Numbered from the stretch's first letter, positions 18,806 to 44,000 are shown. The stretch is 64,000 bases of DNA from Paragordius varius (GCA_964247055.1 OZ176054.1:13144001-13208000); one strand, 5' to 3'. Program-made: numbers and translations. Notes: generated from the letters alone by a model not told the origin.

Positions 18806-18840
<35 letters not shown>

Positions 18841-21800
18841 TTCCTCACTGTTTGGTGGTACCCCACAAAGCAGTACGACGACCAACATTTTTGGGGTAAA
18901 TTCCAACCCCAGTATTTTTGGTGCTTCCTCGTCTTCGTTTCTGGTTTTATTTTATTTAAAATTTTATTTAATTTATAAATTAAATTTTAATTTGATTAAA
19001 TTTTAATTTTGTAAGTAAATATGTTTAAAAATAAGCTATTGAATATATATATATATATATATAAGTTTAATGTCCAAATTAAGGGGTATTTTATAATATA
19101 TTTTTAAAATATTTTATAAATTTTTTGATTTTTTTTATATATTTCTTTAATTTATGTTTTTTTAAAAAAATTTAGACTAGTACTACACCTTCGCTGTTTG
19201 GAGCTGCTCAGGTATTTTTTTATTTTTAGAAAATTTAATTTTTTTCGAATAAAAGAAAATTTTTTTATTTTTATACCATAAAAATTTTTCTTATATTAAA
19301 AATTTTATATTTTTATATCCTTTAAAAATTTGCAATTTGAAAAAATTATATTTTTTATTTATTTTTTTATTAATATTTTTTTATTTTATATATAATTTAG
19401 CCTTCCGCAACACCCAGTCTTTTCGGGCAACAAACGGTAAAAAATTTAAAATTATTTTATTTATTCAAAAAAAAATAAATTAAATATTTCTGTGATTTAA
19501 TTAAATATTAATTTTTTTTACAATTTTGAATTTTTTTTTTAGTCACAACCAACAGCTGTTGCGACTCCATTTCAGTTTGGCGTTACGCCTCAAGTATATT
19601 TTATATTTTTTTGTAATTTTTTTTGAAAAAAAATTAAATTAACCGAAGCTCATTTAATTTAAAAAGAATTTTTTTAAAAGATTTTTTGTAATATATTTTT
19701 AACAATATAAGTTAGATTTGGAATATAGTATTTATTAATTATAGCTATAAAATGATTATATGGAAAGAATTAAGGTTTAATATGGGGCTGTCTTTTATTT
19801 GTCTTATATTGTTTTGTCTTTTTTAAATAATTCCTATTTTATTTTTTATAGTTTGTTTTTTTTTAAATTTTATACTATAAAATTTTAAAATTTTTTTATA
19901 GTTTTATTTAACACTTAATGTCAAACATTATTCCATTTTTTTGTATTTCATTTATTTTTTAATTCCGAATTTTTTATATCTTAGGTAGCAAGCAATGCCC
20001 CGAGCTTATTTGGAACAGGGGCGGCGAAACCCGCCCTCTTTTCTGGTTTTGGCCAGCCGACCGCTCCTGCCATCTCGACTACCCCGGGATTTTCATTTAA
20101 TTTTGGTAATTCATAATTTTTTTTTGAAAGTTTAAGAATTGTTTTATTAAAAAACTTTTTAATTCTTTTAATTAGGATTTGCATAAATAATTATATCATT
20201 TTCTTAAGTTTATTCTTTTTTCTTTATTATAGTTTCGAAATAGTTTTTTCTTAAAAAGTTCTATATATGTATTCATCGTACTAAGTTAAAAACATTTAGA
20301 ATTTTTTTTTCAGTTTTACATAATTTAACTTTCAGAAAACTTATATTTTTGTTTGAGAACACTGTATTTTTTGAAAAAAAAACATTATGTTAAAAAACAA
20401 ATTTTTTACCTGGAATAGGAACTTTTTTATTTATTTTTAAAATGTTTTTCTATTAAGGAAAAATCCTCAGTTTTTATCAGGATTGGAAAAATTATAACCA
20501 TTTTTATTGATTTAAATATAAAACTCAAAAATATTTTTTCCTTAAAAATTCTCAAACTATTTTTATATAGGTAGCACAGTAGTTTCAACTTCATCATCAG
20601 CTGTTCCTGGGGGGTTTTTTGGAGGGCAACCCACTGTGGTCAGTTCAACGACCCCAAGTTTTTTTGGCGCCACACCTGCTCTGGGCTCTAATCTTTTTGG
20701 TAAAATTGCTTGTTTTCCATAAAATCAATTGGAATTGGAATTAATTAGGATTTGATTAAATGTTAAATGTCATTTTTTGCCAAAATATAAATTTTTTAAC
20801 CTAATTCATAGAACAGTAAAACTTTTAAAATTATACGGACAAAACGTGAAAATATAAGAACGGATTTTTTTTCTAAATTACAACCTTACTTTTTTTAATT
20901 CCTTATCTTATGTTACTCATTTGTTTTAAACTGCATTATATTTATCAATTATTATGTATTTTTTGATAAATGATTTTTAAATAGGATAAATTACGGTTTA
21001 GAAAATATGAGGGTATCTTTTAAAAAAAATATTTGTCCCTATATTTTCACATTTTGTCCGTATAAATTCATAATTTTACTGTGTATTTTGACAAAAAATG
21101 TTAATATTAAAATATATTAATATTTTTTTTGATAATTAATTTTAACATTTATTATATTTTTAGGTCAACCGGTTGCAAGTTCGACCCCATCACTATTTGG
21201 ATTTCCTTCTGGTATTAATTTAAGAAATTTTTTTTAATTTCACTTTAAATGTTTAAGATTTAAAATTTGGTGGTGAATTTATAATTATTAATAAATTTAC
21301 AGTATAATATAAAAATATAAATATTAATTAATATACTATAGATATATTTAGAAATATCACATTATTTAGCTTAACTTTGAAGTTTTGTCCTATAGAAATT
21401 AGGGTTTTATATTCAAAAGTATTTATATATATATATATATATATATTAGGCTTATTTTCCCCACACTATATATAGTTGTGGTCAATTGGTAACACACTCT
21501 ACTAGTGTATGGAAAAAACAACAAAATATCTAAATTTAACAATCTTTACCCATCTAATAACATTACATTACTTTAATGATTTAAGACTTTGTTGTTGTTT
21601 TTTCCATACACTAGTGTGTTGCCACACCACAACTATATATATAGTGTGGTTAATAAGCCAGTATTAAAATGCAAACTATAATACGTGGGTAGAAAATAAG
21701 GTTTCTAAACATTTGATTTCCGCTTTATATTTAATTTGATTTTTAAAGCTGTTTCAACAAATGCGCCACCTTCCCTGTTCGGCGGCCAACAGCCTCAACA

Positions 21801-24800
21801 AACATCAACCGGAGGGGGATTTTCATTTTTTGGGGGCGGGAATATTCCAGGGCAAGCATCTGCCCCATCTGCACCCACAGGTGGAGGCAGTACATTCAAT
21901 TTCTTTGGATCATCATCAGCTGTTATCACTACGACTTCAACTCAGGCCGCGCCAAGCTTTGGCGCGTTTGGATTTGGAGCTGCTACCGGTATATTTTGTC
22001 TAGATTATAGATTCTAGAATATTCTATTTTTTTCGTTTCTACAGTTATTTAAATGTGTTTTGATTAGAGTTCCATAAGGAAAAGTGTGCGTAATAGATTA
22101 AAAATTTATTTTCTTTTTACTTTATGTTTGTCGTTTATAAATTTATGTTACACACATGTCTATATCCAAACATATTTTCAAAACAGCTGGCAGTGGGGGC
22201 GCTTTTGGATTTCCCGCCAAAACAACTTCTTCTGCAGCTGCTCCAACTGGATTTTCTTTCTTTGGCGCTCCTTCTCAAACATCAGCTGTTGTCAACACAA
22301 CAACACCTTCCCTGTTCGGTTTTGGCGGCGGGCCATCATCTGTGTTTGGCGCGCCACAAACACAGCTAGGAACTGCGCCCTCTTTTGGGGCAGCCACTAC
22401 ATCAGCTGGTGGGCAATTTTCTTTGTTTCAAATGCCGTCCGCTGCTCCATCAGCTGTTTCAGCCCCAAATCTATTTGGTGGTGGAGGAGGATTTCCGTCT
22501 GCACCCGGATTCAACATGGCGGCGCCCATAAGTAGTACTCCTGCGCCATCTTTGTTTGGCTTTGGTACAAATCAAACGCCTGCATTTGGGTAAGTTTTTA
22601 CAGATACACCTATATAAAATTTAAATGATACGGACAAAACATAAAAATATAAGACAAATGTTTTTTTAATTCTAAAAAGCGGAGGAAAATACATTTATTC
22701 AGGGTCAATAATATTTTTCTTTAGTCTGTAAAGTTTTTATCCTTAAATCTGGCAAATATGAATATAATTTTTACAATTTTATATCATTTACATTTCAAAT
22801 CCATTCACCCCTTAAACAGAATGAATGGAATTTCGTTTAAAATTAATATAATAAAGAAAAATATGATAAACTGCGCCACAAAGGAATATAGATCACAATA
22901 ATAATAATAATAATGGGTTAAATTAGCCCCAAAATTGATGAAATTTATTTTTAGGGGGTTTAAAATGTTTACGATTAAATGGTTTTAAATGTTAAGAGTG
23001 AATTTGAAAATAATGCTAAGGTATATTTGATCAAAATTATGTTTTAGAGGGAATTTAAAATATTTTACAGGGAATTTAAACTGTTTTAGAGTGAATTTGA
23101 AATATTTCAAGTGGTAACTTAAAAAAATATAATATTTTTTAAACCAAATTCTTCTATATTGATAGTTCTTTTGGGGGAACTGGAAATACGAATAATCCTT
23201 TTAATTTTGGAAATTCGTCGATTCAACCAACCGGTTTTGGCGGTTCTTCTTTATTCGGTCAATCATTGGCGACCCAACAAGCATCAGCGCCATCATCTGG
23301 TTTATTTGGTAATCTTTTTTTTATTTTGATTTAAAATTGCATTTTTAACAAATAAAACTTTTAAAGTAATAACTCTTTAAAAATCAGTTATTTTATGTTA
23401 ATTTTTTAGAGATTATTATTTGGTTTTAATCTTAAATGGCTTAAAAAGTTGAGAAATTATACAGTAAAAACTGAAATAATACGGATAAAACTTAAAAATA
23501 TTATGACTAATAATTTTTAAGACAACTATATTTTTAAATCTTGATTTATTTAAATAAAACTCATTATTTATAAATGGCATAATTTTAATTGTAACTAAGT
23601 TGCTTATATGGGGAACATTTAGATTTTAAAAGTATGGTTGTCTTTTAGATAAAAATATTTGTCTTTATATTTTAACGTTTTGTCCTTATGTTGAATTTTA
23701 ATTTTTACTGTAAAATGCCAAAATTGTTTAAAAAGTACAAATATTGACAGTTTTTTACTTTTAAAGAAACCATATTTAAATATTTTATTAAATATAGTGA
23801 AATTCAAATTATACTATGGGCTAAACGTAAAAATATAAAGACATATATTTTTTTAAAATACAACCAACACAATACTTTTTATACCTTAATTTACCCCTAT
23901 AAAAATATTTAAATACAATTGTAAAATATATAATTTGTTGTGTTACCAAATTTATATTATCCATTTGGATTTGAAACACCTTAAGTAAATTAAAAAAATT
24001 TTTAAATGGTTGTTTAGTATTGTCTTTATATTTTCAGTTTTCTCCGTATAATTTGAATTTTTACGGTAATAACAAACGCATATAAAAAATCCTTTTAAAA
24101 ATAACTCTATTTAAAATATTTTTAAATATATATAATATTTTGAGAATATTATTTTTCATTCTATTCATATATGTAATAATTTAACTTTAGTTCAATCCCA
24201 ACCAACTCAAACACCGCAAATAACCCAATCAAATTATACAGGGTATAGTATATATATATACATATTAATTTTTTTTCATATATATCTGGTTTTTTTTTCG
24301 ATTTAAAATGTATGATTACTTATATTTTTACTTACACTTTGTAGATCCTTGATACCATCAAGCTTAAGCGCTCAAACATTTCAAAATGGTAATTAATTTT
24401 TTTATTTTTTAATTGTTAATTTTTTTTAATTTTTTGTTGAAAATTTTTTATATTTTTTTTAGTAAAATATGAAAAGAAATGAAATAATACGGACAAATTA
24501 TAAAAATATAAAGACACAAATACTATTTTTTTCTAAAACCATACTTTTGTTTCAAACCTTAATTTTTTTCCTACATAAATTATTAAAGTTACATTTTTAA
24601 ATGATATAACTGAGTGTAGGTATTATCAATTTACTTCATCTTTAATTCCTATTTTGTAATTTAAAACGATAAGTAATATTGTGTAAATATTAAGGCTTAA
24701 AAAGTATGGCGTTATCTTTATATTTTTACGTTTTGTCCATAAAATAGTGTGAATTTTATTTTATCGATTAAAAATTTAAAAATAAATTTAATTTAAAAGA

Positions 24801-27800
24801 GTCTACTTAAAGTCTTTGAGAGCTAATACAATAAAATAGTGAAATATAATTTTTTTTATTTTATATACAGTAAAAATTGAAATTATACGAAAGGACAAAA
24901 TGTAAAAATATAAAAACAAATACTATTTTTTCTAAAAGACAACCAACCATACTTATTAAATTTTGTGATTTTTTTTAAATATTTCCTATTTTTCAAATGG
25001 CAAAGTGAGAAATAGAGATATATATTACTAACACAATCAATCTTAAATATTATATCGTAATTGTAATAAAAATTGGAATTATACGGACAAAATGTAAAAT
25101 TATAAAGATAAATATTTTTTTCTAAGAGAAAACCATACTTTTTTAAACCTTAATTTTCAAAATATAACTCATTGTTTCAAATTGCACAATATAAAATAGA
25201 AATGTAAATTGGTAGCACAATCAATTACTTAGTTTACGATTGTAATTAAATATTTTAAATAGCAAAAATCAAGGTTTGAAAAAGCATGGGGTTGTCTTTT
25301 GAAAAAAAATGTTTGTCTTTATATTTTAAGTTTTGTCCTTCCGTATAATTTCTGTTTTTACTGTAAATTGCTTATTTAAGAAAAGGTAAGTCTTGAAAAA
25401 ATATGGGTTTGTTTTTTGAAAAAAAATATTTCTCTTTATATTTTAAAATTTCGTCTGTATAAATATTAATTTTTACTCTAAACTTATATAAAGAATTAAG
25501 GATTTGAAAATAGGATATATAAAAAAAATTTCCTCTCTTATTATATGAAATTTTATTGGTAAATTTTGTTTCTGGTTTTTACTTTAGTTTTCTCAGATCC
25601 GACTGGTCCTTTAAGAAAACAAATTTTGGATTTGGTTAATCTTATGCCATACGGCGATGTTCCCCTCGGGAATAGCTCATTATTTTTACAAGTTGAATAT
25701 TTATGATATTTTTTTGAAAATTTCTTTATAAAAGCAATAATTAAAAAGTAATTTGTTGTTTAAAATCTAATTTATCTAATGCTCGAATAATATAATACGA
25801 ATAATTATTATATACTAAAAATTAATTTAACGGTAAAAGACAAATGTTTTTTATTCTAAGAGATAACTATTATCATTTTTTAATACACATATTGTTATAT
25901 TTAGTTATGGAAAATAAATTTATGATTTTAAAATTATTATACCATTAAACTTCAAATTCACCCTCAAATAACTCAAATTCACCCAAAATAAAGTTTTTTT
26001 AAGATTAAAAATATAATAATTTGTTTAAAGCTAAAATAATACTGAAAAAATAATAAACTAAGCTATATAAACATAAATTTATACTAATAATGAGTTATAT
26101 TAGTTGCCCGAAAACATAATTTATTTTTAGGGTGAATTTGAATTGTTCAAGGGTGAATTTGAATTGTTCAAGGTGAATTTGAATTCAAGGGTGAATTTGA
26201 AGTGTTCAAGGGTGAATTTAAATTGCCTAAGGGTGAATTCGATTTGTTTAAGGGTGATATTGAATTGTTTAAGGGTGAATTTAAATTGTTTAGGGTGAAT
26301 TTGAATTGTCTAAGGGTGAATTGAATTGTTCAAGAGTGAATTTGAATTGTTCAAGAGTGAATTTGAATTGTTCAAGGGTGAATTTATATTGTCTAAGGGT
26401 GAATTCGATTTGTTTGAGGGTGAATTTGAATTGTTTAATTCGATTTGTTTGAGAGTGAATTTGAATTGTTTAAGGGGGAATTGTGGTTCAAGGGTGAATT
26501 TGAATTGTTAAAGGGTGAATTGTAAAGGGTGAATTTGAATTGTTCAAGGGTGAATTTATATTGTCTAAGGGTGAATTCGATTTGTTTGAGGGTGAATTTG
26601 AATTGTTTAATTCGATTTGTTTGAGGGTCAATTAGAATTGTTTAAGGGGGAATTGAATTGTTCAAGGGTGAATTTGAATTGTTAAAGGTTAAATTGTTCA
26701 AGGGTGAATTTGAATTGTTCAAGGGTGAATTTGAATTGTTTAAGGGGGAATTTAATTGTTCAAGGGTGAATTTGAATTGTTTAAGGGTGAATTGAATTGT
26801 TCAAGGGTGAATTTGAATTGTTTAAGGGTGAATTTGAATTATTCGAAGGTGAATTTAAATTGTTTAAGGTGAATTTAAATTGTTTAAGGGTATATATCGT
26901 TTTTCATGTTAAAAAATTCATTTTTTTGCTTCGTATGATATTATTAATTCCTCTTTTATTATTGGAATTTAAACTTAATTCCCATCGTAATTTTTAAATG
27001 TATTTAGGATTCTGGACGTGTGCAAAAATCAAGCCCCTCACATTTACCTTCCTTGTTTGATAATAATGTAGTTGATAATCAAAAAACTTCAAATACTTCA
27101 AGTTTAAAGGGTGATTCTATTGATGGTATATTTAATATTTTTATTTTTTGTGACAATTTTAAGTTTGAAATTTTTTTTTATTAGCAATTAAAGACAATAT
27201 ATAGTACAAATAAATTTTAGTATAATTTTTATTTTTCATTCAATTACCATAATTTTTGAGTAAAATATATGGTTATAATTCTAGTTTCCAAACTACTATT
27301 TTAAAATATTTTCATATTACAATTAAACATTTTAAAATTAAATATCACATATTTTTAAAGTTTATTTAATACTACATTTTTTTTAAAAAAAACTTCAAAA
27401 AATATTTAACATTTAATTTTAATAGGTCGTAAAAGCTCTGTACTCTTTTCTGGGTTAATTCCAACCCAGCTTGGAGCAATGCGTTATACACCCAACAATA
27501 AATTTTCATTGCCTACATTTGGATTTGAATCTTCTCCAAAGCGGAATTCTCCGTTTTTAAGCACTAGTCCGTTAAGATCAAACTCTTTTAGATTGGTAAG
27601 TTTTAATTTAGTTTTATCAAGTTTTTTTTATAAAATTATAAGGAATATTATTTGTGTTTTTTTGCAAATAAAAGTCTTTCAAAATGGTTTTTCGTTTTTA
27701 GGAAAAACCTTTAGTTTAAATAATTAATTTGGAAAAATTCGTATGTTATAAAAAAATACAATTTTTAATTTCTTGTAAAAATATGAACAGTGAAATGGAA

Positions 27801-30800
27801 ATTATAAGGATAACACATACATGAATCTACCATGATTTTAATGTGATATTTTTCAAAAAAATCTATTTTTAACAAGTCAAAAAAAGGTTAACTTAAAAAA
27901 ATAAATTTTTTGCTTTTAAATATTTCAATATTATTTTCATTGAAATCTTTTATTATAAACAATAAAAATTAACATTTATTTTTAATATTACCACCCACAT
28001 CCAATAATACTAAATTTCAAAAATATCAAAAATAATATTTTATAGAATTGTAAAATAAGGGTTAATAATACGTTTTTTATAGGTTTTTATCATTAGCTTT
28101 TTAACTTTCATATTTGATTTGTAGAAAGAATTGTTTAAAGAAACACCCCCTAGCCCATCAAAGGAAAATGGAAAAATTAGGAATTTTGACTTGAATGATC
28201 AATCCATTGCAATTATACCTCGAAATAAAAGCGCAAATAGTAAAACTTTACAATTATCTTTTTACTTAAATAAGTTTGTTCATATTTTTTTATATTTATC
28301 CTTTTAACCATGAATTTATAATTAAAATTAAAAGTATGAGGTTTTCTAATAGAGAGCCATAAAAAAATTAATAACTCAAGTTTTACAAAATCAACCAAAT
28401 TTTTAGGGAATATAATTATTCTATGATTAGATATGGAGTTTATAGGCTCAGTTTCTTATTTTATTTTTTAACACTATTCATTTAAACTATGTAAAAAAAT
28501 AGCTAAAAATTTCTTATAAAATAGATAAATTTAAACCTTTGGGTATAGTTTAACTTAGATAATAACTTTTTTTAGGCAACATTTATCTTTTTTTCTATAA
28601 ATTAAAGCATTATTTTATATTAGAATCAAGCTTGAACGCTTCCTTATTATTTCCATCAACTCCATTCAACCTTTTTGGATCTGGTCAAAAAAATGCCAGT
28701 TTTATCCCTCAACATTCAAATCTAAATAATGTTGAACAAAACTCGAATGGTAGGAATTTGAAAAAATTAAACGTAAAAGCTGGCGCATATATTAGTCCAA
28801 AGACAATTGGAAATTTTGCATTTTCACAAAGATCATTGAATTTCAATGGATTAACAACAATGGATTTCAAAACCTCACCTTCAAAAAGGATTTTTAATAT
28901 TGAAGATAATCCTAGTCATTTAAGTCTGTCTACCCCGGGTGTTAGGTATTATTGATATTAATTTAATCAAAATAACTTTTTGTTAGGTCACTTTAACGCA
29001 CGAATTTATTTAATATTTTGAAATTTTTGGGTATAAAAGATAGATATAGATCAAAGCGTGTCCAACACGCGCCTCGAAAATATTTCAGCAGCCCTAGAAA
29101 AATCAAAAAATACTCTCTAGCGATAATTGTTATCATAGATTTTTTACAGTCCTGTCCTATGTTTGAATTTAATATAATATCTATACATGTCCATATACTT
29201 TTTAAATATGAGGGGCGCCTGTCGGTTTTTTAAGTGAAAAATGCCGCCCACGAATTCATTTGTGTTGGACAGCCCCTTGTTTATGCGCATTAGGTTACCA
29301 ATAGAAAATTTTTCAAAAATAGTCGACATATATATGCAATCAAATTTTTCATATAAAACCCATATATATATAAATGGGAGGAATTGACAATGTAATAATA
29401 TCACCATCGTTTATATGAGATTAAATTTTTTGTAAAAAGTTAGGAAACACAAAATCTTACATCTTTTTATATATATATATATATTAGTCGTTATCAATCA
29501 CTATATCCGAAATTAACGGTTCCCGACTCAGTCTTTTCAGTAGATTCGACTGATTCAAATGCGCTCTTTTCATCTTTTCATCAAGAGCAAAGTTTAGAAA
29601 ATATTGATAATCGGGATTTGTCTTTTATATCAACACGCGACAATTTATCTGGACCTTCTGGTATATTTTTATTATTATATATGAAGAATATTTTTACTTT
29701 ACTGTGTAAATATTGGAGTTTTTTCAAATTTTCATAGCAAATTCCTTATTAATCAGTTCTTCACCCATTGTCTTATTAACCATATATCATTACGATAATA
29801 TGTTTTTTTTTCAAATGAGAATAATATATTTTCTTAACAATTCTTTTGATTATGTTGGTTTTGAATAAATATGATTCATATTTAATTTACAAGCTTTTTT
29901 CGTTACCTTTATATTTTAATGGAGAAGAGCGTTTACCATATATAATATGCATGAAACGCTAATTAAAGTTAAAATATATTTTGCTCCTTATCGAATATGT
30001 TTCCATCTCTGATTTAATTATATCTGTTTAAAATTTTTGTTTCTCAAAATAGAAATGTAAATTGATAATCGTTTTTTGTCTAAATGATTTCCATAAACAT
30101 TTTTAGAACATGATGGTCCCTCCTTTGAACAACATCAAAAAAACCAATTTGCGCAAATCAACTCTAATACAATTGAATTATTTCATCCATCTATGGTTGA
30201 GGATTATTACCAATCAAATAACTTTTACAGTGAAGATGAAGGCGAATTCCAATTAATCAGTAGTGATTCTGAAAATGAAAGTCCTAAAAAACGAAGTGGC
30301 AAAACACAAAAAACGGCGACTCCTGGAAAATTGCAAAATTTTAGTGGCTCTAATAGTTCCCTGCAAAATAGGAACCATCAAGAATCATCGTTGAATGTGA
30401 ACAGCTTGCTTAAGAAATTAGCCTTTGAACGGCCCTTGTTTAAATGTACTAAACCTGGGTATGTATAACTAATTTTTTAAATACTTTATATACCAAATTT
30501 AAGGTCTAAAGTGTTAGTTAATGATAAATAATTGGGAAATATGGAGGTGCCCATTTGAAAGAATTACAAAATTAATTTTTCCATTATTTTCTGAATATTT
30601 TTTTAATATAAACATTTATAATTATGAATTAAAGTTTAAAATGCTAAGTAAAAAATAAAGATGATTTAATAAAAAAAATAAAATCTATTTCTTTCAACCA
30701 AAAAAACTATAAACTTTACGCGTGTTGATTTTTAACATAACGTATACCATATAATTAATGTTAATAAAATTGAGATATTGAGATTTCAACGTTTAAAATT

Positions 30801-32793
30801 TAAGATTTTCTCAAACAATTAATTACTTTTATTTTTTTGTCTAAATAATTTTAATTTTTATATACTAGAAACATATCTATGATAATCTTTTTTTTTCATA
30901 GATATACCACGGCCCCAAGCGTAGAGGAATGTTATGAAATGTATTTGAACAATTTGCGTAAAACTATTATAGATTTTTATGACAACGATCCTGATATGGT
31001 GGATAAAGCTAGGAGTCGTCTAATGATTAACAATTTTACGATTGAAAGAAAGGTTTTTATTTAACCTTTTTTTCGATAAAAAAATTCAAAAATATTAAAC
31101 GTATTTGAAGTATTATTTGATTTACCGGTTAATTTTTATAAAGATCACTTTAAAATATTGAAATTTATGTTGGTTAAGTGATATAAGTATGAAATTTTAA
31201 ATAGTTGTATGTAATTTGTGTTAATGTAAAAGGAGTGTTTCAGTTTTATTATTTATATTTTTTGGTTCAACATTTGGATTTTTAAATAACATCTCCTTTG
31301 GTTTTATATAAATTGGTATATTTTAATCTGTAAAAAACCCAACACAAGCCTTTAAATTCCTATACAAATTATAATTTGTTGAAAATTAGCATTAAAATAT
31401 TCTTTTAAATGAATAAAACAATATAAAACTTTAAAGTATTGCATATATTTAATTTTTTTTATATTAAAAAAGAATATATATGTATATATTTTATTTTGTA
31501 GGGTTATGGATCTATCATGTTTCCTGGAGAAATTAATGTTATAGGCCTCAACATTGATAGAAATGGTAAAAAGATTTATTTATGCTCTCAATTATAAAAT
31601 TACCATACCATATTTTTGAAAATTTTAACGGGGAAAAATTTAATTTTTTTGAATAACGAAACTAAAACAATTTTAGTTTAAAAATTTTCTCAATTTTCAA
31701 TTTTTATAGCCATATATATATATATATATATTTTAATATTAAAATCTCACCAGGCATATAAAATATACTTCAATAGACACCATATTGAAATAAAATAAAT
31801 ATTTTTCCTTTTATTAGTCCTGATTGATGTTAAGGATGTCGAAATTTATCCGGATGAAGTGGAAAAACCCATATTGGGTGAGGAAATGAACCGACCAGCT
31901 CTTATAACACTTCACAATACTTATCCCATTGATAAATCAACTTTGCAACCAATTAAGGTACTAATTTATTAAATTAAAAGTAGAAATTACAGTAAAAACT
32001 GAAATTATACGGACAAAACCTCAAAAAAGATAAATATTTTTTTTCTAGAATCTTGATTTGTTCCAATATAACTCATTGTTTTAAACTGCAAAATACGAAA
32101 TTGATATGTTTATTGGTAAAACAATTAATTTATTTACAATCGTAGGAAAAATTAAGGTTTAAAAAAATGATGGTTGTCTTTTGTGTAAAAATTGTCTTTA
32201 TATTTTTTCGTATAATTTCAGTTTTTACTGTATACCTATGTCAGGGTGCATAAAGTTAGAAAATACCCAAATAGTTAATAAAAGATAAAAATAGCTTAGT
32301 CAAATTAATAACTAGGTTTGTAATTATGGGGTTAACCTCCTATCATAATTATATTTACATTAATGATTTTCTATTAAATAGATAAAAAACCTTTTAATTT
32401 TAATGTTAACGGATTTTTGTTTTTAAAATAAAGTTTATTTTATATACCACCATAATGGTAATAAATATTTTATTAATATAGGAATTGGATAAGATAATTG
32501 ATTTCAATTATGAGAAACGTTTACGCATCGCTTGTAAGAAAATGGGAGTTAAGTTTATCGATTATATTCCACACACTGGGACATGGATGTTTGAGGTAAT
32601 TTTAGTTTCAGATCAATTAAAAAAACTTTTTGATAAATTATTTGAGATGAGTTTTTATTTATTAAAATTCAATTTTTTTTACATATTTTCTATTTTAAAC
32701 CTCTTATTTATTTCATTTTGAAAAAGTTCGTAATTTATCACTTTTTAAATATATAATATGATCCTTAAATTATTTTAGGTCTCCCATTTTTAA
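15987..32793 (+). CDS. NUP98: Nucleoporin Nup98 (FG domain, GLEBS, autoprotease domain), about 1286 aa, 29 exons, ending VSHF-stop; not fused to Nup96
   Basis: Exons: 15987-16077, 16479-16619, 17015-17185, 17578-17705, 18342-18435, 18840-18943, 19176-19211, 19401-19436, 19543-19593, 19985-20105, 20571-20699, 21164-21211, 21749-21988, 22187-22589, 23166-23308, 24191-24242, 24345-24388, 25597-25691, 27008-27125, 27426-27595, 28125-28239, 28624-28945, 29488-29660, 30107-30458, 30902-31052, 31502-31565, 31818-31957, 32482-32595, 32779-32793. All GT-AG and phase-consistent (3861 nt). GLEBS: GTTIKFKAPT...QCISAMKEYENKSLEELRLEDYMANRK. APD: KPGYTTAPS...FTIERKGYGSIMF...NRPALITL...YEKRL...GTWMFEVSHF. 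A few linker-exon boundaries are less certain. Confidence 0.95.
20814..21081. mobile_element. TA-flanked Tc1/mariner-type MITE family (cagtaaaaactgaaattatacggacaaaacg...), copy in a Nup98 intron
   Basis: Inverted termini cagtaaaa...ttatacggacaaaacg and ttttgtccgtata...ttttactg. Confidence 0.7.
21449..21659. mobile_element. Palindromic MITE with ~75-bp inverted arms
   Basis: ggcttatt...ccacactatatatagttgtgg...ctagtgtatggaaaaaacaaca is mirrored by tgttgtttttccatacactag...ccacaactatatatatagtgtgg...aataagcc. Confidence 0.75.
23462..23710. mobile_element. TA-flanked MITE copy
   Basis: TA|cagtaaaaactgaaataatacgg ... atttttactg|TA. A second, more degenerate copy follows at ~23795-24065. Confidence 0.8.
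24470..25490. mobile_element. Cluster of about 4 nested or partial TA-flanked MITE copies (Nup98 intron 17)
   Basis: Repeated atacggacaaa / ttttgtcc arms at ~24487, 24735, 24868, 25080, 25340 and 25455. Confidence 0.7.
25938..26894. mobile_element. Foldback-like MITE, copy B, with the right arm expanded to about 36 copies of the 21-mer
   Basis: Left end tataccatta with about 2 repeats; same core as copy A but inverted; agggtgaatttgaattgttca array at 26128-26890 ending gggtata. Confidence 0.8.
29052..29279. mobile_element. hAT/Charlie-like MITE; related termini at ~10385-10420 and ~16255-16290
   Basis: caaagcgtgtccaacac ... gtgttggacagccccttg. The shared gcttcgcgggccgca subterminal motif is seen in the other fragments. 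No TSD found. Confidence 0.5.
31990..32230. mobile_element. TA-flanked MITE copy
   Basis: TA|cagtaaaaactgaaattatacgg ... cgtataatttcagtttttactg|TA. Confidence 0.85.
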
Positions 32794-33566
32794 ACTCAAA
32801 TATCTGGAAAAAATGACTCAAAAAAATCAAACTCAAAGCCTACATAAGAAACAGCCTTCTCTATTATATTAATGTTATGATAAATATCATCCATTTTATA
32901 AAACAAATAAATGTTTAAATTCGCGTAGATACTAATGTGTTGTTGGTTGATATTTATTGAAATCTTTTCATAAATATTTTTTTGTTTTCTTTTTTTTATT
33001 TTCTATATAAATATGGTTTGTCATGTTTAAGCCGATATTCATAATAAATATATATATATTATAACTAATAAATTATATATAATGACTTTAAAACACAATA
33101 ATAAAATAATAGTTATGTGATGTGGGGGTGTAGGGGTAAGATACATAAAAATAACTAATTTATATATACAGGAAACCTCTTCATTTTTTATAAAAACATA
33201 TAAATTTTATCATTTTTTGGGAATTATTTTAGAAAAACCCAAATAATTAAAACTTAGATATCAAAAAAATAGTTTATTCTGTTGAAAATACAAGTGTGCT
33301 TAAATTATCTTTTAAAATTCAAATTTTTGACTAATTTTTTTCACAAAAAAAGGTTTGACTGTTATACATATTGAAAAGTGTGACTGCGTCGTGGTTTTAC
33401 ATTTAAATACTAATATAAAAAAAGGATATATTAATATAAGGGGCGAAAATTAAAGAGAATTTTTCTTTACATTAAGTTAAAAGTAATAGAAAATGTGACA
33501 TCTTTTATATGTTTTTAAAACTTGGACAATAAAAAGGGTAATTTTTTCCCCCACGTTTAGTTTGGT

Positions 33567-35248: not shown

Positions 35249-38200
35249 AACTATTGAGAAAAACTAATCTGATTATGTTAAATATATTCAGTTTAAACTT
35301 TTTGCATTTTTATTAAAATAAAAAACTGTTAAAATAGTTTTTATGTATAATTTCATCAATCTTTACTCTACTATATACTTCGGTAAAAATTGATACATAC
35401 CAAACTATTGAGAAAAACTAATCTGATTATGTTAAATATATTCAATTTAAAACTTTTTTAAAATAAATATTCTTTTTTTACTTTTTCTAAGTAAAATTTC
35501 AGTTTTTACTGGATATATTTTTGTAAAATTGATATATATAAACTATGGCCAAAAACTAATCAGATTATGTTAAATATATATTCAATTTAAAACTTTTTGC
35601 ATTTTTATAAACATAAAAAGACTTTGTAAAATAATTTCTATCACCTGAATAATTTGGGCGATTTTTTTCCCTTATTTTCCATTTTATCATAATTTTCATT
35701 TTTATTGTCTTTGTTGTGAATTACAATGTTGTAACAAGCGTCACAAAAGGTCGGAGCTAAAATGCGTTGTGGATAACACGTTAAAGTTTTGATGACCTAG
35801 AAATATTAACATTTCCCATTAATTTATGATTTATTGAATTTTACGTAAAAATTAAAATTATAATAAAACTAAATTAAAATCACTTATATCCACACAAATT
35901 TTTGGCGATATAAATTTTTATTGTTTTTTTTTTCGTAACAAATGTTAGAAAGCTTTTTTTTATTTTTACAAGTTATTTATGAGAAACCCTTGTTATATAA
36001 AAAAAATCAATGAAAAACCATAAATTTATATAATATTTATATGATTTACAAAAAAACGTAAATTTTTTTTATAATATTAAATTCTAACGCATATCCATTT
36101 ATAAAATCACTAATATAAGTTAATTAATAAAAGGAAGTGTAAAGTTTAAGCAGTGCTAAATTATATTGCACAGTTATACTTATTATCAAAAAAATTTATT
36201 TCTTTTGTAATATGGAAATATTTTTAATAATACTTGTTAAAGATTCATTAAATAGCAAATATAAATTTTACTCATGTTTTCATGGGTTATTCCAAAAAAG
36301 TGTCGTGTTAACTTCACATAAAAATAATTTAACAGATGGTAAAAATAAATAATAAATAATTTATAAAACCATTTTCAAATTTCTAGTCAACAGCTGATTG
36401 ACTTGACTGTAATCGTAATCGTCATGGCGGATCCCATATGCCGAATGAATGTAATTCCAAATGGCCCGACGAAACATGGACGTATCTACGTTACTTACAC
36501 AACCCATTCTGGAATATAAAATATTATAAGAATAAAAATTTAGTTTTAAATTATTTTTTTTGGATATCACAATAAAAGAATAATTTGAAATAAATTTTCT
36601 ATAATATATATTGAAATTAATTTCAATTTCAAAAATGTTTAAAATTTCACGGGACTTAAAAAATAAACATAAAAACAATTTTTTCAAATTTAAATAAAAT
36701 GACAAACTTCCGATTGGTACAAATATATAAAAAACTTTTTTTATGCAAAAATAATCTCAAAGTATTTTTCATTATTAAGTTTTATATTTATCAAAAATCA
36801 AAAGATTTAAAAAGTATGGTTGGTTGAAATATTATTTGTCTTTATATTTGCACATTTTGTCCGTAATTCGCTTTTTACTGTATTAAATTTTTAAGTGAAA
36901 ATAAAAATAATATGCAATTTAAGTGAATTTTTTGACTTTATTTTTAATCATTCAACATATCAATAAAGTTTTTATAGAAATAAATCTATATTTGCACAAA
37001 AAATTAAAAAAAAACATATGTTAATATTTAGTTTATAATTAATAAAATTCATAGTACGTGGAATAAGTAAGGTGATATGCCATACGGAATTTGTCATCTA
37101 ACAGATTGCTTAGCTCAGGACACAATCTATTAACCAGTGCATACCCATGGTGTTCCCAAGAATAATCCTATATAATATATTTTTAAACAACAAAAATAAA
37201 AAAAGAAATTTTAAATAAAATTAATTAATTAATTAAATCAAGTAAAAAGGATGGTAAATAAGAGGTTTATAAAATATATGATTAAGGTATATTAAACAAT
37301 CCTTATTACAGTAAATTTGAAATTATATGGACAAAACGTAAAAATGTTACGATAAAAATTTTTTTGAAAAGATTTTCATACTTTTTTTATAACAAAATCA
37401 TTTGATAACAATCGTAAAATATGTAATTAATTGTGCCAATATACATTGTTATTTTATACTTTGGAGTTTAAGACAATGAGTTATATTTTAAAAAACCAAG
37501 TTTTTGTCGTTATTTTTTTACATTTTGTCCGTATAATTTCATTTTTTACTGATAGGCATTTATATAAATATAAAATATATCAAAAAAATTGGAATTTACA
37601 AAAAAACGCACTGTTTTTTTCAGATCTCATCTCTATATAGAAAAAAAACTTGGTTTTTTACTCAAGGGTAATTTTATCAAATTATTACATTTTACTCTAT
37701 TTTATACATCATTTTACTTTAAAAAAAACCAAAATTTATCTAATACAATATTGTAAATAAATTCTCAAACAAATTATAATTTAGAAGAAATATAAACTTG
37801 AATTCTAAAGGTAGGGGCTTGACTAGGATGGTCTCGCTTAGCAAAATCAACGTAAGAAAAAGTTTCATCAGCGGAAATAAAAGTTGAAGCTTTAACTAAA
37901 TCCAACACTTCCGTGAGATTAGAACCGTCTCGTTTAAGCTTATTCCTCCAATCTTCAGTTTTGTTTTCATCTCTGACCATGGTTAAAATTTGATATTATA
38001 TACCATTTACACAAATTCAAATTCACTCTTAAACAATTCAAAATGACCCTTAAGCGATTCTAATTCACCCTTAAACAATTCATATTCACCCTTAAACAAT
38101 TCATATTCACCCTTAAACAATTTAAATTCACCCTTAAACAATTCAAAAAAAAATTCAAATTGAACCCTAAAAATAAATTATGTGTTTTCGGGCAGCTAAT

Positions 38201-40539
38201 ATAACCCATCATCATTAATATGAAATATATTTTTAAGAACATATATTATTCGGCATTATATTAATTTTAAACAGAATTTCGTATTTTAAAAATATTAAAA
38301 AATAATGGTAGATTATAATCGTAAAAAACATATAATTTATTTTAGAGTGAATTTAAATTGTTTGAGGGTGAATTTGAATTGTTCAAGGGTGAATTTGAAT
38401 TGTCCGAGGGTGAATTTGAATTGGAAATGATAAAGCAAAGGATGAAAGGACATACGTCAAAATATAAAGACAATAATTTTTCTCAAAAGACAACTACATT
38501 TTTTAAACTTGATTGTTTTTTAAAAATAACTAAATGTTTTGAACTGCAAAGTAAGAAATAGTTGTGTAAAAGGGTAATATAATCAATTATCTATTTTATA
38601 TAATTTGTGGCGGAAAAACTAAGTTTCCTAGCAGTATGAGGTTATTTTTTTAAAAAAAATTATATGTCTTTATGTTTTTAAGTTTTGTCCGTAAAATTTT
38701 AGTAGGCAATCAAAATGTAAAAATAAAAGTATGGTAAAAATAAATATTAAATATATATCACTATTGGTTTCCCCCAAAACTATAAAAATTAAGGATAAAA
38801 AAATATTTTTTAACAAAATTCATATTATAAGCAACATGGTATACTTTTGACAAAAAAATATTTTATTCATTTTATATACCATTTACAATTCAAATTCACC
38901 CCCTGAACAATTCAATTTTACCCTTAAACAATTCAAATTCACCCTCAAATAAATAACATGTTTTTTAAGATTAAAAAATACCAATATTTTTATATATTTT
39001 TAAAAAATAAAAATTTTGTTTTAAAATCATACTGAAAAAATAATAAACTATAACATAAACATATATTTCATATTTATAATGAGTTATATTAGCTGTCCGA
39101 AAACATATAATATATTTTTAGGGTGAATATGAATTGTTCAAGGGTCAATTTGAACAGTAAATGGTATATATTTATTCTAGGAAATATTAGTAAATTAATT
39201 TTCATCTATATTCCAATATTCGTAAACTAAAACGATTGTTTGTGCCTTTAACTTTTACTTGAGTGTTTAAAATATATTTTTAACTTGTTTAAACAACTTT
39301 TAGCAAATATGCTTTTACTTGAAATTATTCGTTCGACGCAAGTTAGTTTCATCGAATTGAAGTAAGAGGGATGATGGACAACTACTGTTTGTCGTCGTGT
39401 TGTCTTCATCAGAAGTAATTCCACTTTGAGGTGAACTCAACAAGACATTGAAATTGGGGTTTTTAATCACATTCTTTCAAATTTAATAATAAAAATTATA
39501 ATTTTAAAGATAAAAATTGAATTAAAATTAAATCAAAGATTAATCCATAAAAATGTAAAAAAATAAAAGACAATTTTTTTTCTAAAAAAACAACCCCATA
39601 CATGGTTAAAGAAACCTTAATTTATCCTATAAAAAACATTTAATTATAATCAAATACATTAATGAATGTGTTATCAATTTCCATTTCTATATAAAACAAT
39701 GAGAGTTATATTTAAAAATATTAAGATTAAAAGTCTATTGGAAAAAATATATGTCTTTATATTTTAACATTTGTCCGTATAATTTCAATTTTTACCGTAA
39801 AATTAATGTATCAAAATTACTGAAAGAGACAAATATTTTTTGGTATATAAAGATAGCCCCATACTTTTTTGAACACACCTTGATTTTTATTAAGTATGTA
39901 ACCTATTGATTATTTTGGATTGCAAGCATAGGGAGAAACATAAATAGGGTTACAAAATTATATTAGTTTATGTGGGAAATATCAAGGTATAAAAAAGTAT
40001 GGCTATCTATAAATTGTCTATTGTTAGGGTAATATATAAGGACAAACCCTTAAAACTAAAAGAAAAATATAATAAAAAAGACATTTTTTTTATAAATAAA
40101 AAGACCCCAAAATTATTTTATAAAAACATTGATATTTTATATATATTTTACATGTTAACAATTTGGAATTTCATAGGTGTCTTTACTAATTTATGTATCT
40201 ATTTTCCTCAATTTATCGCCCCAAAATAATAGGTTATATTACTTGTAAAATTAATCAAGGTTATAATATAAAATCGTCTTCATATATGTTATATAGGATA
40301 ATTTTATTTCAATTAACATACTGCAGTTTCTAGCGTGGATTCAAAGGTATAATTTTTTAATGTAGTTTGTGGAGGTTCAGGTTTAATGGTCATAGCCAGG
40401 GCGATATCTATTGCTTTTTGAGATGAGGGTGTTGCTATATATATGTAGGAAAAAATTATTGAACATTTTTTAGAAATATTGTGACTCAAACTAATGTTTT
40501 AACACATCATCCAGTTAAAGTTTTTTAATCAAAAGTTTG

Positions 40540-40576
<37 letters not shown>

Positions 40577-41039
40577 AAAAAATTATTAAACATTTTTATA
40601 AATTGTAAAATAAAAATCTAATGTTTTAACAATATAAACATTTTTATAAATTGTAGAATAAAAATCTAATGTTTTAACACATCATCTAAAGTTTTTTAAT
40701 CAATCGCTTTTTTTATTTATATATATTAAAGGAAAAAATTATCAAACATTTTTATAAATTGTAGAATAAAAATCTAATGTTTTAACACATCATCAAGTTT
40801 TTTAATCAATCGCTTTTTTTATTTATATATATATAGGAAAAAATTTATTAAACATTTATAAATTGTAGAATAAAAATCTAATGTTTTAACACATCATCCA
40901 GTTAAAGTTTGTTAATCAAAAGTTCGTTTATATATATATATATATATATATAATTATTAAACATTTTTATAAATTGTAGAATTAAATTGATGTTTTAACA
41001 CATCATCCAGTTAAATTTTTAATCAAAAGTTCGCTTTTT

Positions 41040-41083
<44 letters not shown>

Positions 41084-44000
41084 AAAAAATTTATGAAACA
41101 TTTTTAGAAATATTGTGACTTAAACTAATGTTTTAACACATCATCCAGTTAAAGTTTTTTAATCAAAAGTTCACTTTTATATATATATATATATATAGAA
41201 AAAAATTATTTTTATATATCGTGACTTAAACTAATGTTTTAACATCACCCAGTCAAAGTTTTTTAATCAAAAGTTTGCTTTTTTAAGAAAAAATCTTTTT
41301 TTTACCCATAAAACTTATAATTACAGGTGATCAAATATGGGTAATAAAGTGTGAATAAGGCATCAATTAACCTCAAATTAAAAACTTTAAATCTAAATTT
41401 ATTAAGAGTTGACTTCTTTTTATACTTAAACATATATTTTACCTAAAAAATAGTCCTTTGGAAAAAACTTAAATATTTTAATATTCTACCTTACCATAAC
41501 TTACCTCACATATTTTAAGGCTTTAAAATTCAAATTTTACAAACAAAAGAGAATATATAAAGCCAGCCAATTACACTTAATATTGAAAAATTTTACAGTA
41601 TATATGCCTTTCAATGGTTACTTATTTCATAACACTATAGTAGGGGGCAATTTGCAACAAAAGATTATATCGAAAAAAAGGAAATGAAAAAATTGTTAAT
41701 TCGAAATTTTATTGTTTTTTCCATACATTCCTGTGTTGAAATCGCTCTCTACTATAGTGTTGTGAACTAAGCACCATTAAAATAAATGCATACTGTAAAT
41801 TTTTACTGTAAAATTGAATAAAATAATTATAATAGCAGGTCAATTCACAATAGTATATCGAAAAAACGGAAAGAAAAAATTGTTTATTCAATATTTTTTA
41901 GTTTTTTTTTTTTTCATACTAAAAATTGCCCAATTATATATAGTTTGAAATAAGCAACCATTAAAATAAATGCAGGCATATTGTAAAATTTTACTGTAAA
42001 ATTAAAAAAAATTGTTTAATCAACGTTTTGTTGTTTTATCATACATTCCTGTGTGGAAATTTCTCAAAATAAGCAACCATTAAAATAAATGCATACTATA
42101 AATTTTTACTGTAAAATTGAAAAAAAAACTTAATCATGATAGTAGGGGGCAATTTGCAACACAATAGTATATCGAAAAAAAGAATTTTTTTCATTATTTT
42201 GTTGTTTTTTTCATACACTTATGTGTTGAAATTGCCTAACTAAGAAACCATTTAAAATGAATGCATACTGTAAATTATTTTTACTGTAAAATTGAAAAAT
42301 CTCAATAGTGTATCGAAAAAAAAGATATGAAAAAATAGTCTATTCAATATTTGGTCGTTTTTTCCATAAACAATACTGTTGTGTTTCAAATTGCCCCCTA
42401 CTAACGTGTTGAAATTGCTCAAAATAAGAAACCATTAATGAATACATACTGGAAATTTTACTTTAAAACTGAAAAAAAAACTTTATTCTTTACCCGGAGA
42501 TATGGTATTAACATCTTGTGCCATTTCAATGTTGGTGTTTCCAGGAAACATTTCATAATTCTCATTATTGTTATCTAAATCCTGAGCTCGAATCTTTTGA
42601 TGTAAAACTTTCATTTTAGTTATCAGGGCGTCGACAGTCACCTCTTCAAAAGCTTCCAACTATGTTTTAGTATGCAGAAGAGTAAAATTTAGACGGGTTA
42701 TATTATTAGGGTTTAAGAACATTTTAAACATAAAATACAGTCATGTTGTCGTTTATTTTTTTATTAGGCAAATCCCTTAACCTATAAACAACCCTAGATA
42801 AAAACACTTGATGAAAACCTCAGAATTTGGAATTAACAGTCCTATTTTATAACATCCAAGGGGGTTTGTAAAAGACTTTGGTCATGATTTTTAATCAAGA
42901 TGCTATAATTAAACAAATTTTTATGTACAATCCATAGATGTGTTAAATAATGACATATCTATTTAAGTTTCAACAATCTATAACTAATCGATAAGCATAA
43001 TTTATATATTGGCAATATATACTCATCTTTCTGGCTTAAACTGCTGTGAATAATGTTAAAATAAAATAGTTTTTATATTGTTTAATGTAAAACACTCATA
43101 TTAATTAAGGATAACCTTTAACGTCAAACAAAGTAAAAACTATTCCCCCTATTAAAATCAAAGATTTTCAAAAAGTCTCAAAAAAATTTCTCTATCTGTA
43201 AAATTTTACGCAATCTTCGCCCTCGTCTACTGTGTTAAGTTGTAAATCATCATTTGCGGATGGTTCTATCAGAGAATTCTCGTTTTCGGTTGTTGAAACA
43301 AGCAAAACCTTTCTATTCAGCAGGGGTGTACTCGAGTTAGGGTTAATATTACTTGTTTGCAATGGATATGAGAGGGGTGTATCCGTTAACAAAGAGTTTT
43401 TATTGCTTTGTTCTATATCATCATACAAGTAAAAACAGTAAAAAAAGTTTAAAGTTGAATAACTTAAAATAAATTTACATTTTTATTTTACATTTGACAT
43501 AATTCACATATAAAATATATAATTTTAATGATTTATAGTTTTAATTAATAGGAAAATTATACAATGACGATATTTCTAAAGAGTTAGGCGTGAATTAAAT
43601 ATATATATGTGCGTTTGAAAAAATATTTTATAATATAATTAGGTATATACTGTAATTTTTTATAATTTCAAGTACAAGGTTTAGAAACCCTAAGTTTCAT
43701 ATTTCACATGGAGACACTTAAAATTCAGATATATAATATATGGTTGATACCTTAACTCACCCCCTTTAAACCAGTAAAAACACTCTATAAGCCCTTTAAA
43801 AACTTAACATTTAAACCCAATTTCAAATCAAAAAACCAATTTTTATATTAGGTAACCACCGTCCTTGTTAAAACTGTTAATCTTATAATTTTCAAGTCAA
43901 ATTTCTTAAATTAGAGCTTTAAAACCTAAAAAAGTACGCCCTAAAATTTCCTATTTTAAACGTAACAAATTCATTTAAACCTCAAAATTTTCCAACCCAA

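What the first reader, a model, noticed from the sequence alone, without database searches (positions are those of the whole stretch)
32779..32793. Nup98 ends with a stop codon exactly at the autoproteolysis site (HF|S becomes HF-TAA)
The last exon is GTC TCC CAT TTT TAA (VSHF*). In animals and fungi the APD cuts between F and the nucleophilic Ser of HFS. Here the Ser codon position is TAA, one base from TCA, and is followed by an 18-codon open remnant (TQISGKNDSKKSNSKPT*). The translated product therefore equals the normally cleaved product. The self-cleavage step appears replaced by a hard-coded terminus while the catalytic Lys (VKDVEIY) and His remain. I know of no animal example, but could not search.
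Basis: partly seen in the sequence, partly recalled or inferred. Interest (0 to 1): 0.85.

Follow-up and report, generated by a model that had tools for sequence, protein, structure and literature searches.

The report
Stand-alone Nup98 ending at its cleavage site
In this AT-rich animal genome (nearest relative found: a horsehair worm), the nuclear-pore protein Nup98 has its own gene, whose stop codon sits where other animals' Nup98-Nup96 precursor cuts itself; plants and yeast paralogues already show the split arrangement.

Summary
The last coding exon reads GTC TCC CAT TTT TAA (VSHF-stop) at 32779-32793, behind a canonical AG acceptor. It is joined in phase to exon 32482-32595.

In alignments to solved structures, VSHF matches the last four residues of mature human Nup98. 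The TAA therefore sits at the position of the nucleophilic serine.

It is not an artefact. The horsehair worm Gordionus has the same final intron and a terminal exon GTA TCA CAC TTT TGA. Synonymous sites between the two genes are saturated, yet the residues and the stop position are kept.

No Nup96 coding sequence and no alternative HFS exon exist anywhere in the 64 kb window. Sestrin runs convergently from about 3.5 kb downstream.

My best reading is a stand-alone Nup98 whose mature C-terminus is made by translation termination, not autoproteolysis. This parallels plants (separate Nup98 and Nup96 genes) and yeast Nup116/Nup100.

The "open remnant" after the stop is unconserved 3'UTR. The lysine named as catalytic is probably the wrong one.

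There are no RNA data for this species, and I could not verify where Nup96 lies.

The scan noted the same VSHF-stop in another Nup98 copy of this genome (s1-310093).

The parts
15987..16080 (+). First coding exon of Nup98, with ATG at 15987 (MFGQKPLFGG...). The 3' boundary is approximate.
   Evidence: ORF list. The N-terminus MFGQKPLFG is identical to Gordionus P0010.
17577..17705 (+). GLEBS (Rae1/Gle2-binding) exon
   Evidence: Pfam PF21240, 54.3 bits. 67% identity to P0010 residues 107-152.
18800..23331 (+). Series of FG-repeat exons (for example 21709-22014, 22141-22590, 23143-23331). Exact boundaries were not determined.
   Evidence: ORF translations rich in FG/SLFG/GLFG. Weak PF13634 hit.
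25611..25667 (+). Conserved piece of the intervening domain (LRKQILDLVNLMPYGDVPL)
   Evidence: tblastn with P0010, 84% identity.
30097..30458 (+). Exon ending ...RPLFKCTKPG(G). Donor GTATGT at 30459. The 5' boundary is approximate.
30902..31052 (+). Autoproteolytic-domain (APD) exon 1 (YTTAPSVEEC...FTIERK)
   Evidence: AG/GT junctions and open frame. Aligns with Gordionus and other animal APDs.
31502..31565 (+). APD exon 2 (GYGSIMFPGEINVIGLNIDRN, plus the first base of the Val codon)
   Evidence: The phase-1 intron is at the same position as in Gordionus.
31818..31957 (+). APD exon 3. It carries the conserved K...N pair (EKPILGEEMN) and PIDK.
   Evidence: PF04096, 38.9 bits. PDB hits to Nup145 and Nup98. 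Conservation analysis.
32482..32595 (+). APD exon 4 (ELDKII...HTGTWMFE). Donor GTAATT at 32596.
   Evidence: Aligns to human Nup98 residues 841-875. 74-87% identity to Gordionus.
32596..32778 (+). Last intron, 183 nt, phase 0, GT...AG. It lies between FE and VSHF.
   Evidence: Gordionus has an intron at the same position (766 nt). The intron is absent in the nemertean Tubulanus and the nematode Mesorhabditis.
32779..32790 (+). The four terminal codons, GTC TCC CAT TTT (V S H F). They match the last four residues of mature human Nup98.
32791..32793 (+). TAA stop codon at the position of the nucleophilic Ser/Thr of the HFS/HFT motif
   Evidence: Gordionus has TGA at the same position.
32794..32930 (+). 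Probable 3'UTR, with AATAAA at 32906-32911. The end is approximate.
   Evidence: The first AATAAA lies 113 nt after the stop (93 nt in Gordionus). There is no similarity between the two downstream sequences.
36364..47519 (-). Sestrin gene on the opposite strand, convergent with Nup98. Its presence leaves no room for Nup96 exons.
   Evidence: PF04636 hits in descending profile order: 47519-46659 (profile 25-77), 46266-46048 (79-138), 37995-37777 (268-308), 36756-36364 (337-389).

Best explanation
The window carries a complete, stand-alone Nup98 gene with FG repeats, a GLEBS motif, an intervening domain and the peptidase-S59 autoproteolytic domain (APD). Its reading frame stops immediately after the His-Phe that precedes the scissile bond in canonical Nup98-Nup96 precursors.

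Shown: the ribosome releases a protein that ends in ...EVSHF-COOH. This is the same C-terminus that other animals produce by an N-O acyl shift at the following Ser. The arrangement has been kept under purifying selection since before this lineage and Gordionus diverged.

Inferred: no autoproteolysis occurs, because neither a nucleophile nor a scissile bond is encoded. The APD is kept for its other job, anchoring Nup98 to the pore through the surface that is freed once nothing is attached after Phe.

Inferred: the stop is pinned to this codon because any uncleavable C-terminal extension would stay attached at that surface. This follows from S. pombe, where cleavage is essential only to remove the tail of the Nup98-only isoform.

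Inferred, not verified here: Nup96 is made from a separate gene elsewhere in the genome, so the ancestral polyprotein gene has undergone fission, probably by duplication and complementary loss.
For: - Sequence and splice phases are consistent.
- Pfam finds APD and GLEBS.
- VSHF equals human residues 877-880 of the 880-residue mature chain. The last Phe of the Gordionus protein aligns with the last residue of mature human Nup98 and with yeast Nup145 F605.
- Gordionus XP_065313475.1 is identical to the submitter's model CAK9290400.1. It ends in VSHF and has the same three last intron positions and phases.
- The Gordionus submitters' annotation (BRAKER/TSEBRA) used RNA-seq and nematomorph transcriptome proteins as evidence.
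- Over the last 110 codons pN is 0.19 and pS is 0.95 (saturated). Of 77 identical residues, 48 use different codons. The terminal exons differ at three third positions and in the stop codon (TAA against TGA), yet encode the same thing.
- No Nup96 similarity was found with 16 animal Nup96 queries, in the whole window or in the 10 kb downstream of the Gordionus gene (best E 0.76).
- No exon of the form AG + V/I/L-x-H-F/Y-S/T exists in the window on either strand.
- Sestrin runs convergently from about 36.4 kb.
- All 18 fused animal proteins aligned, and the nematode Mesorhabditis, keep HF followed by S or T.
- Literature: split Nup98 and Nup96 genes are viable in S. pombe, and cleavage is needed to remove the tail (PMC4483485). 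Plants encode Nup98 and Nup96 separately and have expanded Nup98 (PMC8685260). Yeast Nup100 and Nup116 are not made as fusions (PMC4283134).
Against: - There is no RNA or protein evidence from this species. The 32595/32779 junction rests on comparative evidence only.
- I could not find the Nup96 gene of this genome or of Gordionus. Its separate location rests on an unchecked first-reader note (s1-277357).
- The genome holds further Nup98-like copies (s1-310093, s1-379246, s1-285214; paralogous contigs). This copy could therefore be one of several, and I cannot exclude that a canonical fused gene exists elsewhere.
- The proposed reason for the exact stop position is an inference from work in other organisms.
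Confidence: 0.8

Rival explanations
1. This is an extra Nup98 paralogue of the Nup116/Nup100 type. A canonical, self-cleaving Nup98-Nup96 gene persists elsewhere in the genome, so there has been no true fission.
For: Several Nup98-related copies are noted in this genome. Paralogous contigs at about 4x depth overlay exon 32482-32595. Yeast shows that such paralogues coexist with a fused gene.
Against: The first-reader note s1-277357 describes the Nup96 gene as lacking the FG region (unchecked). In Gordionus, the searches with the GLEBS exon and with the APD returned only the 1037-residue protein, but those searches are not exhaustive.
Confidence: 0.12
2. The exon at 32779 is an alternative terminal exon of a still-fused gene, like the human or S. 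pombe short isoform. The Nup96 exons would lie further downstream.
For: Short Nup98-only isoforms are the rule in animals and fission yeast.
Against: The 31 kb downstream shows no Nup96 similarity and no HFS exon. A convergent sestrin gene starts about 3.5 kb away. The 10 kb downstream in Gordionus is likewise empty. Known short isoforms keep HFS plus a tail, which this one does not.
Confidence: 0.04
3. This is an assembly or sequencing error in the T5 run, or a decaying pseudogene.
For: Homopolymer runs are error-prone. With T4 the frame would continue HF-KLKYLEK... for 28 codons.
Against: Gordionus independently has a stop at the same codon, with a T4 run and TGA. There is strong purifying selection on the domain. 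All splice sites and frames are intact. No listed indel or variant falls at the site in DNA contigs.
Confidence: 0.02
4. Programmed readthrough or recoding of the stop produces a cleavable extension.
For: None specific. TAA and TGA are each one base from TCA.
Against: The in-frame sequences after the stop are short (17 and 30 codons) and unrelated between the two species.
Confidence: 0.02

Closest known systems
Canonical animal and fungal Nup98-Nup96 (human NUP98, yeast Nup145, S. pombe Nup189), peptidase S59
   Same: FG repeats, GLEBS, intervening domain and APD are in the same order. The APD is 35-46% identical to those of fused animal proteins. The His-Phe and the conserved Lys...Asn pair are kept. 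The predicted C-terminus is identical in position to the cleaved product.
   Different: There is no Ser/Thr nucleophile, no scissile bond and no Nup96 downstream, because a stop codon takes the place of Ser. About ten columns that are >=90% conserved in fused proteins have changed, mostly in the same way as in Gordionus. Examples are YRPETGSW to YIPxTGTW, and VHFRR to VLIDV in the window and VYIEI in Gordionus.
Short Nup98-only splice isoforms (human isoforms 3/4; S. pombe spliced nup189)
   Same: Both give Nup98 without Nup96 from a transcript that ends soon after the APD.
   Different: Those isoforms keep HFS plus a tail (33 residues in S. pombe) that must be removed by autocleavage, and they share a gene with Nup96. 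Here there is no tail, no cleavage and no Nup96 in the gene.
Yeast Nup116 and Nup100
   Same: They are stand-alone Nup98 paralogues with an APD-fold C-terminal domain and are not made as a fusion. Going by the alignment coordinates, the Nup116 CTD chains end two or more residues beyond the position aligned with the final Phe (146- to 149-residue chains).
   Different: They coexist with a fused Nup145. I did not see their residues at the His-Phe position. The gene here keeps His-Phe exactly and carries GLEBS, like an orthologue of animal Nup98.
Plant Nup98a/Nup98b and separate Nup96
   Same: Nup98 and Nup96 are on separate genes, and Nup98 has expanded into paralogues (PMC8685260). The notes on this genome suggest the same pattern.
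   Different: This is an independent event in a different kingdom. I could not check whether plant Nup98 also stops exactly after the Phe-equivalent residue.
Gordionus sp. m RMFG-2023 XP_065313475.1 ('Nup98-Nup96-like', 1037 aa)
   Same: It has the same architecture, N-terminus, last three intron positions and VSHF-stop terminal exon.
   Different: It shares 61% identity over the APD (70% over the last 110 residues). Its stop is TGA, not TAA. Its last intron is 766 nt rather than 183 nt. Its first two APD exons are fused.

Membership tests
Nup98 / peptidase S59 (Pfam PF04096 Nucleoporin2) | APD sequence match above the family threshold | tested here: met
   One exon alone scores 38.9 bits against a cut-off of 28.4. 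PDB hits to Nup145 and Nup98 APDs reach E 1e-11. The Gordionus orthologue matches the human APD at E 2e-37.
Nup98 / peptidase S59 (Pfam PF04096 Nucleoporin2) | FG-repeat domain with an embedded GLEBS motif, N-terminal to the APD | tested here: met
   PF21240 scores 54.3 bits. Exons between 16 and 23.3 kb are FG-rich.
Nup98 / peptidase S59 (Pfam PF04096 Nucleoporin2) | His-Phe at the end of the APD, plus the conserved Lys...Asn pair | tested here: met
   Alignment columns K108, N116, H179 and F180 are retained in both the window and Gordionus.
Nup98 / peptidase S59 (Pfam PF04096 Nucleoporin2) | Ser/Thr nucleophile directly after His-Phe (HFS/HFT) | tested here: not met
   TAA sits at 32791-32793, and TGA at the same position in Gordionus. 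All 18 fused animal proteins aligned have S or T there.
Nup98 / peptidase S59 (Pfam PF04096 Nucleoporin2) | Self-cleavage of a precursor | not testable with these tools
   No bond after Phe is encoded, so cleavage at this site cannot occur. Whether the fold is still competent would need biochemistry.
Fused Nup98-Nup96 polyprotein gene | Nup96 (PF12110) encoded in frame downstream of the APD | tested here: not met
   16 Nup96 queries gave a best E of 0.76 over the whole window and L001. Convergent sestrin lies downstream.
Nup98-only short splice isoform | HFS followed by a short tail that is removed by autocleavage, from a gene that also encodes Nup96 | tested here: not met
   There is no residue after Phe, no alternative HFS acceptor and no Nup96 exons.
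Stand-alone Nup98 homologues (yeast Nup116/Nup100, plant Nup98a/b) | APD fold at the extreme C-terminus, with translation ending at or within a few residues of the scissile-equivalent position | tested here: met
   The protein ends exactly at Phe. The Nup116 CTD chains end shortly beyond the aligned position.
Stand-alone Nup98 homologues (yeast Nup116/Nup100, plant Nup98a/b) | Nup96 supplied by another gene | not tested
   The only basis is the unchecked note s1-277357. My searches did not recover a nematomorph Nup96.

The most novel reading that the evidence does not exclude
Horsehair worms as a lineage may have fully uncoupled Nup98 and Nup96 biogenesis. Under this reading the ancestral polyprotein gene was duplicated. 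One descendant lost Nup96 and fixed a stop at the nucleophile codon, then multiplied into several HF-terminated Nup98 paralogues, including a membrane-anchored fusion. The other descendant lost the FG domain but kept a mini-APD in front of Nup96. That would be the first animal lineage in which the 'conserved biogenesis pathway' is dismantled. It would offer a natural test of why the fusion is otherwise kept.
Probability: 0.35. Interest if true: 0.6.

Novelty: new member of a known kind. Interest (0 to 1): 0.45.

Why it matters
Production of Nup98 and Nup96 from one self-cleaving precursor is treated as a conserved biogenesis pathway of animals and fungi. Why the fusion persists is unresolved, because laboratory splitting is tolerated in fission yeast.

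A natural, long-maintained split in an animal lineage shows that the fusion is dispensable in Metazoa too. It was kept long enough to saturate synonymous sites.

The stop is fixed on exactly the nucleophile codon in two genera. This suggests that the free Phe C-terminus itself is the constrained feature. It points to the anchoring role of the domain, not its chemistry, as the function under selection.

It also gives a natural starting point for asking whether an APD that has not cleaved for a long time keeps catalytic competence.

This is not a new kind of system, since plants and yeast paralogues already show the arrangement.

Tried and rejected
1. RNA evidence. Two run searches found only DNA-type contig sets. 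The one 'RNA?' run laid (X8) had no coverage, so the junction is untested by reads.

2. More nematomorph homologues or transcript fragments. Two searches used the Gordionus APD with length windows of 570-1815 and 220-700 residues. They returned only the query, one fish protein, or nothing.

3. The Gordionus Nup96. A 16-sequence profile of the last 100 APD residues plus Nup96 gave 985 hits. The 120 listed were all fused proteins of molluscs, fish and other animals, and a divergent hit could not be seen.

4. Age of the last intron. The Ixodes locus did not contain the relevant exons. Tubulanus and Mesorhabditis show no intron before V-x-H-F. The intron is therefore either a lineage-specific gain at a GAG|GT proto-splice site or an old intron lost elsewhere. 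This remains undecided.

5. 'Remnant' after the stop. In the +1 frame the window reads LKYLE at 32795-32809. In Gordionus, RYL follows the stop in frame, faintly recalling SKYGL. With synonymous sites saturated and the 3'UTRs unalignable, I treat this as chance.

6. Catalytic residue numbering. The primary structural paper was not held, so I used the residue description in a 2026 preprint.

7. Full exon-by-exon model of the FG region. I did not attempt this. Low-complexity exons and weak splice consensus would make a chain uninformative. Only the first exon, the GLEBS exon, one intervening exon and the last six exons are placed.

Full report
**What is in the sequence**

On the + strand, 32779-32793 reads GTC TCC CAT TTT TAA. 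It is preceded by ...ttattttAG and follows an exon that ends ...ACA TGG ATG TTT GAG|GTAATT at 32595/32596.

I followed the reading frame back through 32482-32595, 31818-31957, 31502-31565, 30902-31052 and the end of the exon closing at 30458. This gives 180 open codons with AG/GT at every junction. Two split codons resolve correctly: GG|A for Gly, and G|TC for Val.

The gene starts at 15987 (MFGQKPLFGG...). It contains FG-repeat exons and a GLEBS exon at 17577-17705.

Pfam recognises the autopeptidase S59 domain (PF04096) and GLEBS (PF21240) on single exons.

**Where the stop sits**

Exon 32482-32595 aligns residue for residue with human Nup98 841-875. The chain concerned stops at 880 because it is the mature, cleaved protein (7r5j_U0). 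The remaining E-V-S-H-F therefore corresponds to human K876-V-S-H-F880, and the TAA occupies the codon of Ser881, the nucleophile.

The Gordionus orthologue gives the same result over the whole domain. Its last residue aligns with the last residue of mature human Nup98 and with F605 of yeast Nup145.

**It is real and old**

A search of 1.84 billion representative proteins with the GLEBS exon returned one protein that ends in VSHF. It is the 1037-residue 'Nup98-Nup96-like' protein of the horsehair worm Gordionus sp. m RMFG-2023.

The submitter's model and the RefSeq model of this protein are identical. The submitters' annotation used RNA-seq and nematomorph transcriptome proteins as evidence.

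The Gordionus locus (L001) has the same gene order of conserved exons. It has the same positions and phases for the last three introns. Its terminal exon reads attag|GTA TCA CAC TTT TGA.

Over the last 110 codons the two genes are 70% identical in protein. pN is 0.19 and pS is 0.95, meaning synonymous sites are saturated. Of 77 identical residues, 48 use different codons.

The terminal exons differ at three third positions and in the stop codon, yet encode the same four residues and a stop. An assembly error or a recent nonsense mutation cannot explain this. The stop has been held at this codon by selection.

In both species the first AATAAA lies about 100 nt after the stop (+113 and +93). The downstream sequences are not alignable.

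**No Nup96 here**

Sixteen animal Nup96 sequences found nothing in the whole window, on either strand, or in the 10 kb downstream of the Gordionus gene (best E 0.76).

A pattern search found no site anywhere in the window with AG followed by V/I/L-x-H-F/Y-S/T.

Sestrin exons run on the minus strand from 47.5 kb down to 36.4 kb, with about 55 residues of the profile still to come. The two genes therefore converge within about 3 kb. This agrees with the scan's note s1-285213.

Where Nup96 lies I could not test. An unchecked note (s1-277357) places it on another piece of this genome, behind a 100-residue mini-APD. My three homology searches did not recover a nematomorph Nup96.

**Comparison with other animals**

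All 18 fused animal proteins I aligned carry HF followed by S or T and then K-Y. They include mollusc, fish, nemertean, tick and hemichordate sequences.

The 120 best hits of the Nup96 profile search carry the Nup96 and APD Pfam domains. They come from many phyla.

The nematode Mesorhabditis belari keeps HFSSYGLL.

The intron that separates FE from VSHF is absent in Tubulanus and Mesorhabditis, where one exon runs through the site.

In the two HF-stop proteins the nearly invariant Lys...Asn pair (EKPILGEEMN here), the DK motif and His-Phe are retained. About ten otherwise >=90% conserved columns have changed, mostly in the same way in both. This fits a change of constraint that predates their split.

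The pair eight residues apart fits the description of the catalytic Lys and Asn.

**How it most likely works**

Shown: the gene encodes a Nup98 that ends at the Phe that is normally P1 of the scissile bond, with nothing after it.

Inferred: translation termination replaces autoproteolysis. The APD persists as the pore-anchoring module.

Inferred: the stop cannot drift downstream, because an uncleavable tail would remain attached at the surface that must be free. In S. pombe, separate Nup98 and Nup96 genes are viable, and cleavage is essential precisely to remove the tail of the Nup98-only isoform (PMC4483485).

**What is known**

Plants other than Chlamydomonas and Physcomitrella encode Nup98 and Nup96 on separate genes and have multiplied Nup98 (PMC8685260).

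Yeast Nup100 and Nup116 are Nup98 paralogues that are not made as fusions (PMC4283134). The Nup116 C-terminal domain ends just after the aligned position.

The same literature describes animals and fungi as using the fused gene. I found no paper that links Nematomorpha and Nup98.

The finding is therefore a new, apparently undescribed animal member of a known arrangement. One instance is already present, unremarked, in RefSeq.

**Limits**

- There is no RNA or protein evidence for this species. The DNA contigs laid on the region show no listed variant at the site, but they may derive from the assembly's own sample.
- The same contig data and the scan's notes (s1-310093, s1-379246, s1-285214) indicate further Nup98-like copies in this genome. 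One of them, 6.5 kb beyond the window's end, is also reported to end in VSHF-stop.
- I cannot exclude a canonical fused copy elsewhere in the genome.

Noticed in passing
window 31984-32210: A segment inside the Nup98 intron between exons 31818-31957 and 32482-32595 has contig depth about 2000 times that of its flanks in three runs of three organism labels. Many loose ends and internal joints occur there. It is a very high-copy dispersed repeat.
   Followed up: no
window 32547-32557: The only X1 contig over this part of the APD exon differs from the window at 32547, 32550 and 32553 (third codon positions) and at 32557 (Ile to Val). Its depth is about 4 times the single-copy depth. This points to further conserved Nup98 APD copies in organism A.
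   Followed up: partly
window 26125-26891 (also 38014-38147; related arrays near 3959-4490): A 21-bp tandem array of 38 copies (TTTAAGGGTGAATTTGAATTG) lies in a Nup98 intron. The reverse-complement unit recurs in the sestrin region.
   Followed up: no
window 36364-47519, minus strand: A sestrin (PF04636) gene is spread over at least 11 kb, convergent with Nup98.
   Followed up: partly
window 11892-12158, minus strand: An ORF encodes a near-complete PHF5A-like protein ([39 protein letters not shown]...).
   Followed up: no
window 53157-53228, plus strand: tRNA-Pro (TGG).
   Followed up: no
L004 6001-11376 (Mesorhabditis belari CAUEEP010000630.1): The nematode Nup98 gene model ends HFSSYGLL|intron|ESDETKE-stop, 13 residues after Phe. 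The next called gene, 600 bp downstream, has a weak COX17 Pfam hit. No Nup96 similarity was found in the 6 kb of flank. This may be a stand-alone Nup98 that still needs self-cleavage, which would be an intermediate state. The record is marked partial.
   Followed up: partly
P0001 (Microplitis mediator XP_057337105.1, 1343 aa): This wasp protein matches the GLEBS exon in 8 separate stretches. Several other animal proteins match in 2-3 stretches (Aplysia, Saccoglossus, tardigrade, lungfish).
   Followed up: no
window 32795-32809; L001 22711-22734: Just after the stop, the window reads LKYLE in the +1 frame, and Gordionus reads ...IRYLP in frame. This faintly recalls the SKYGL that follows HF in fused proteins. 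Given the saturated divergence, I judge it to be chance.
   Followed up: partly
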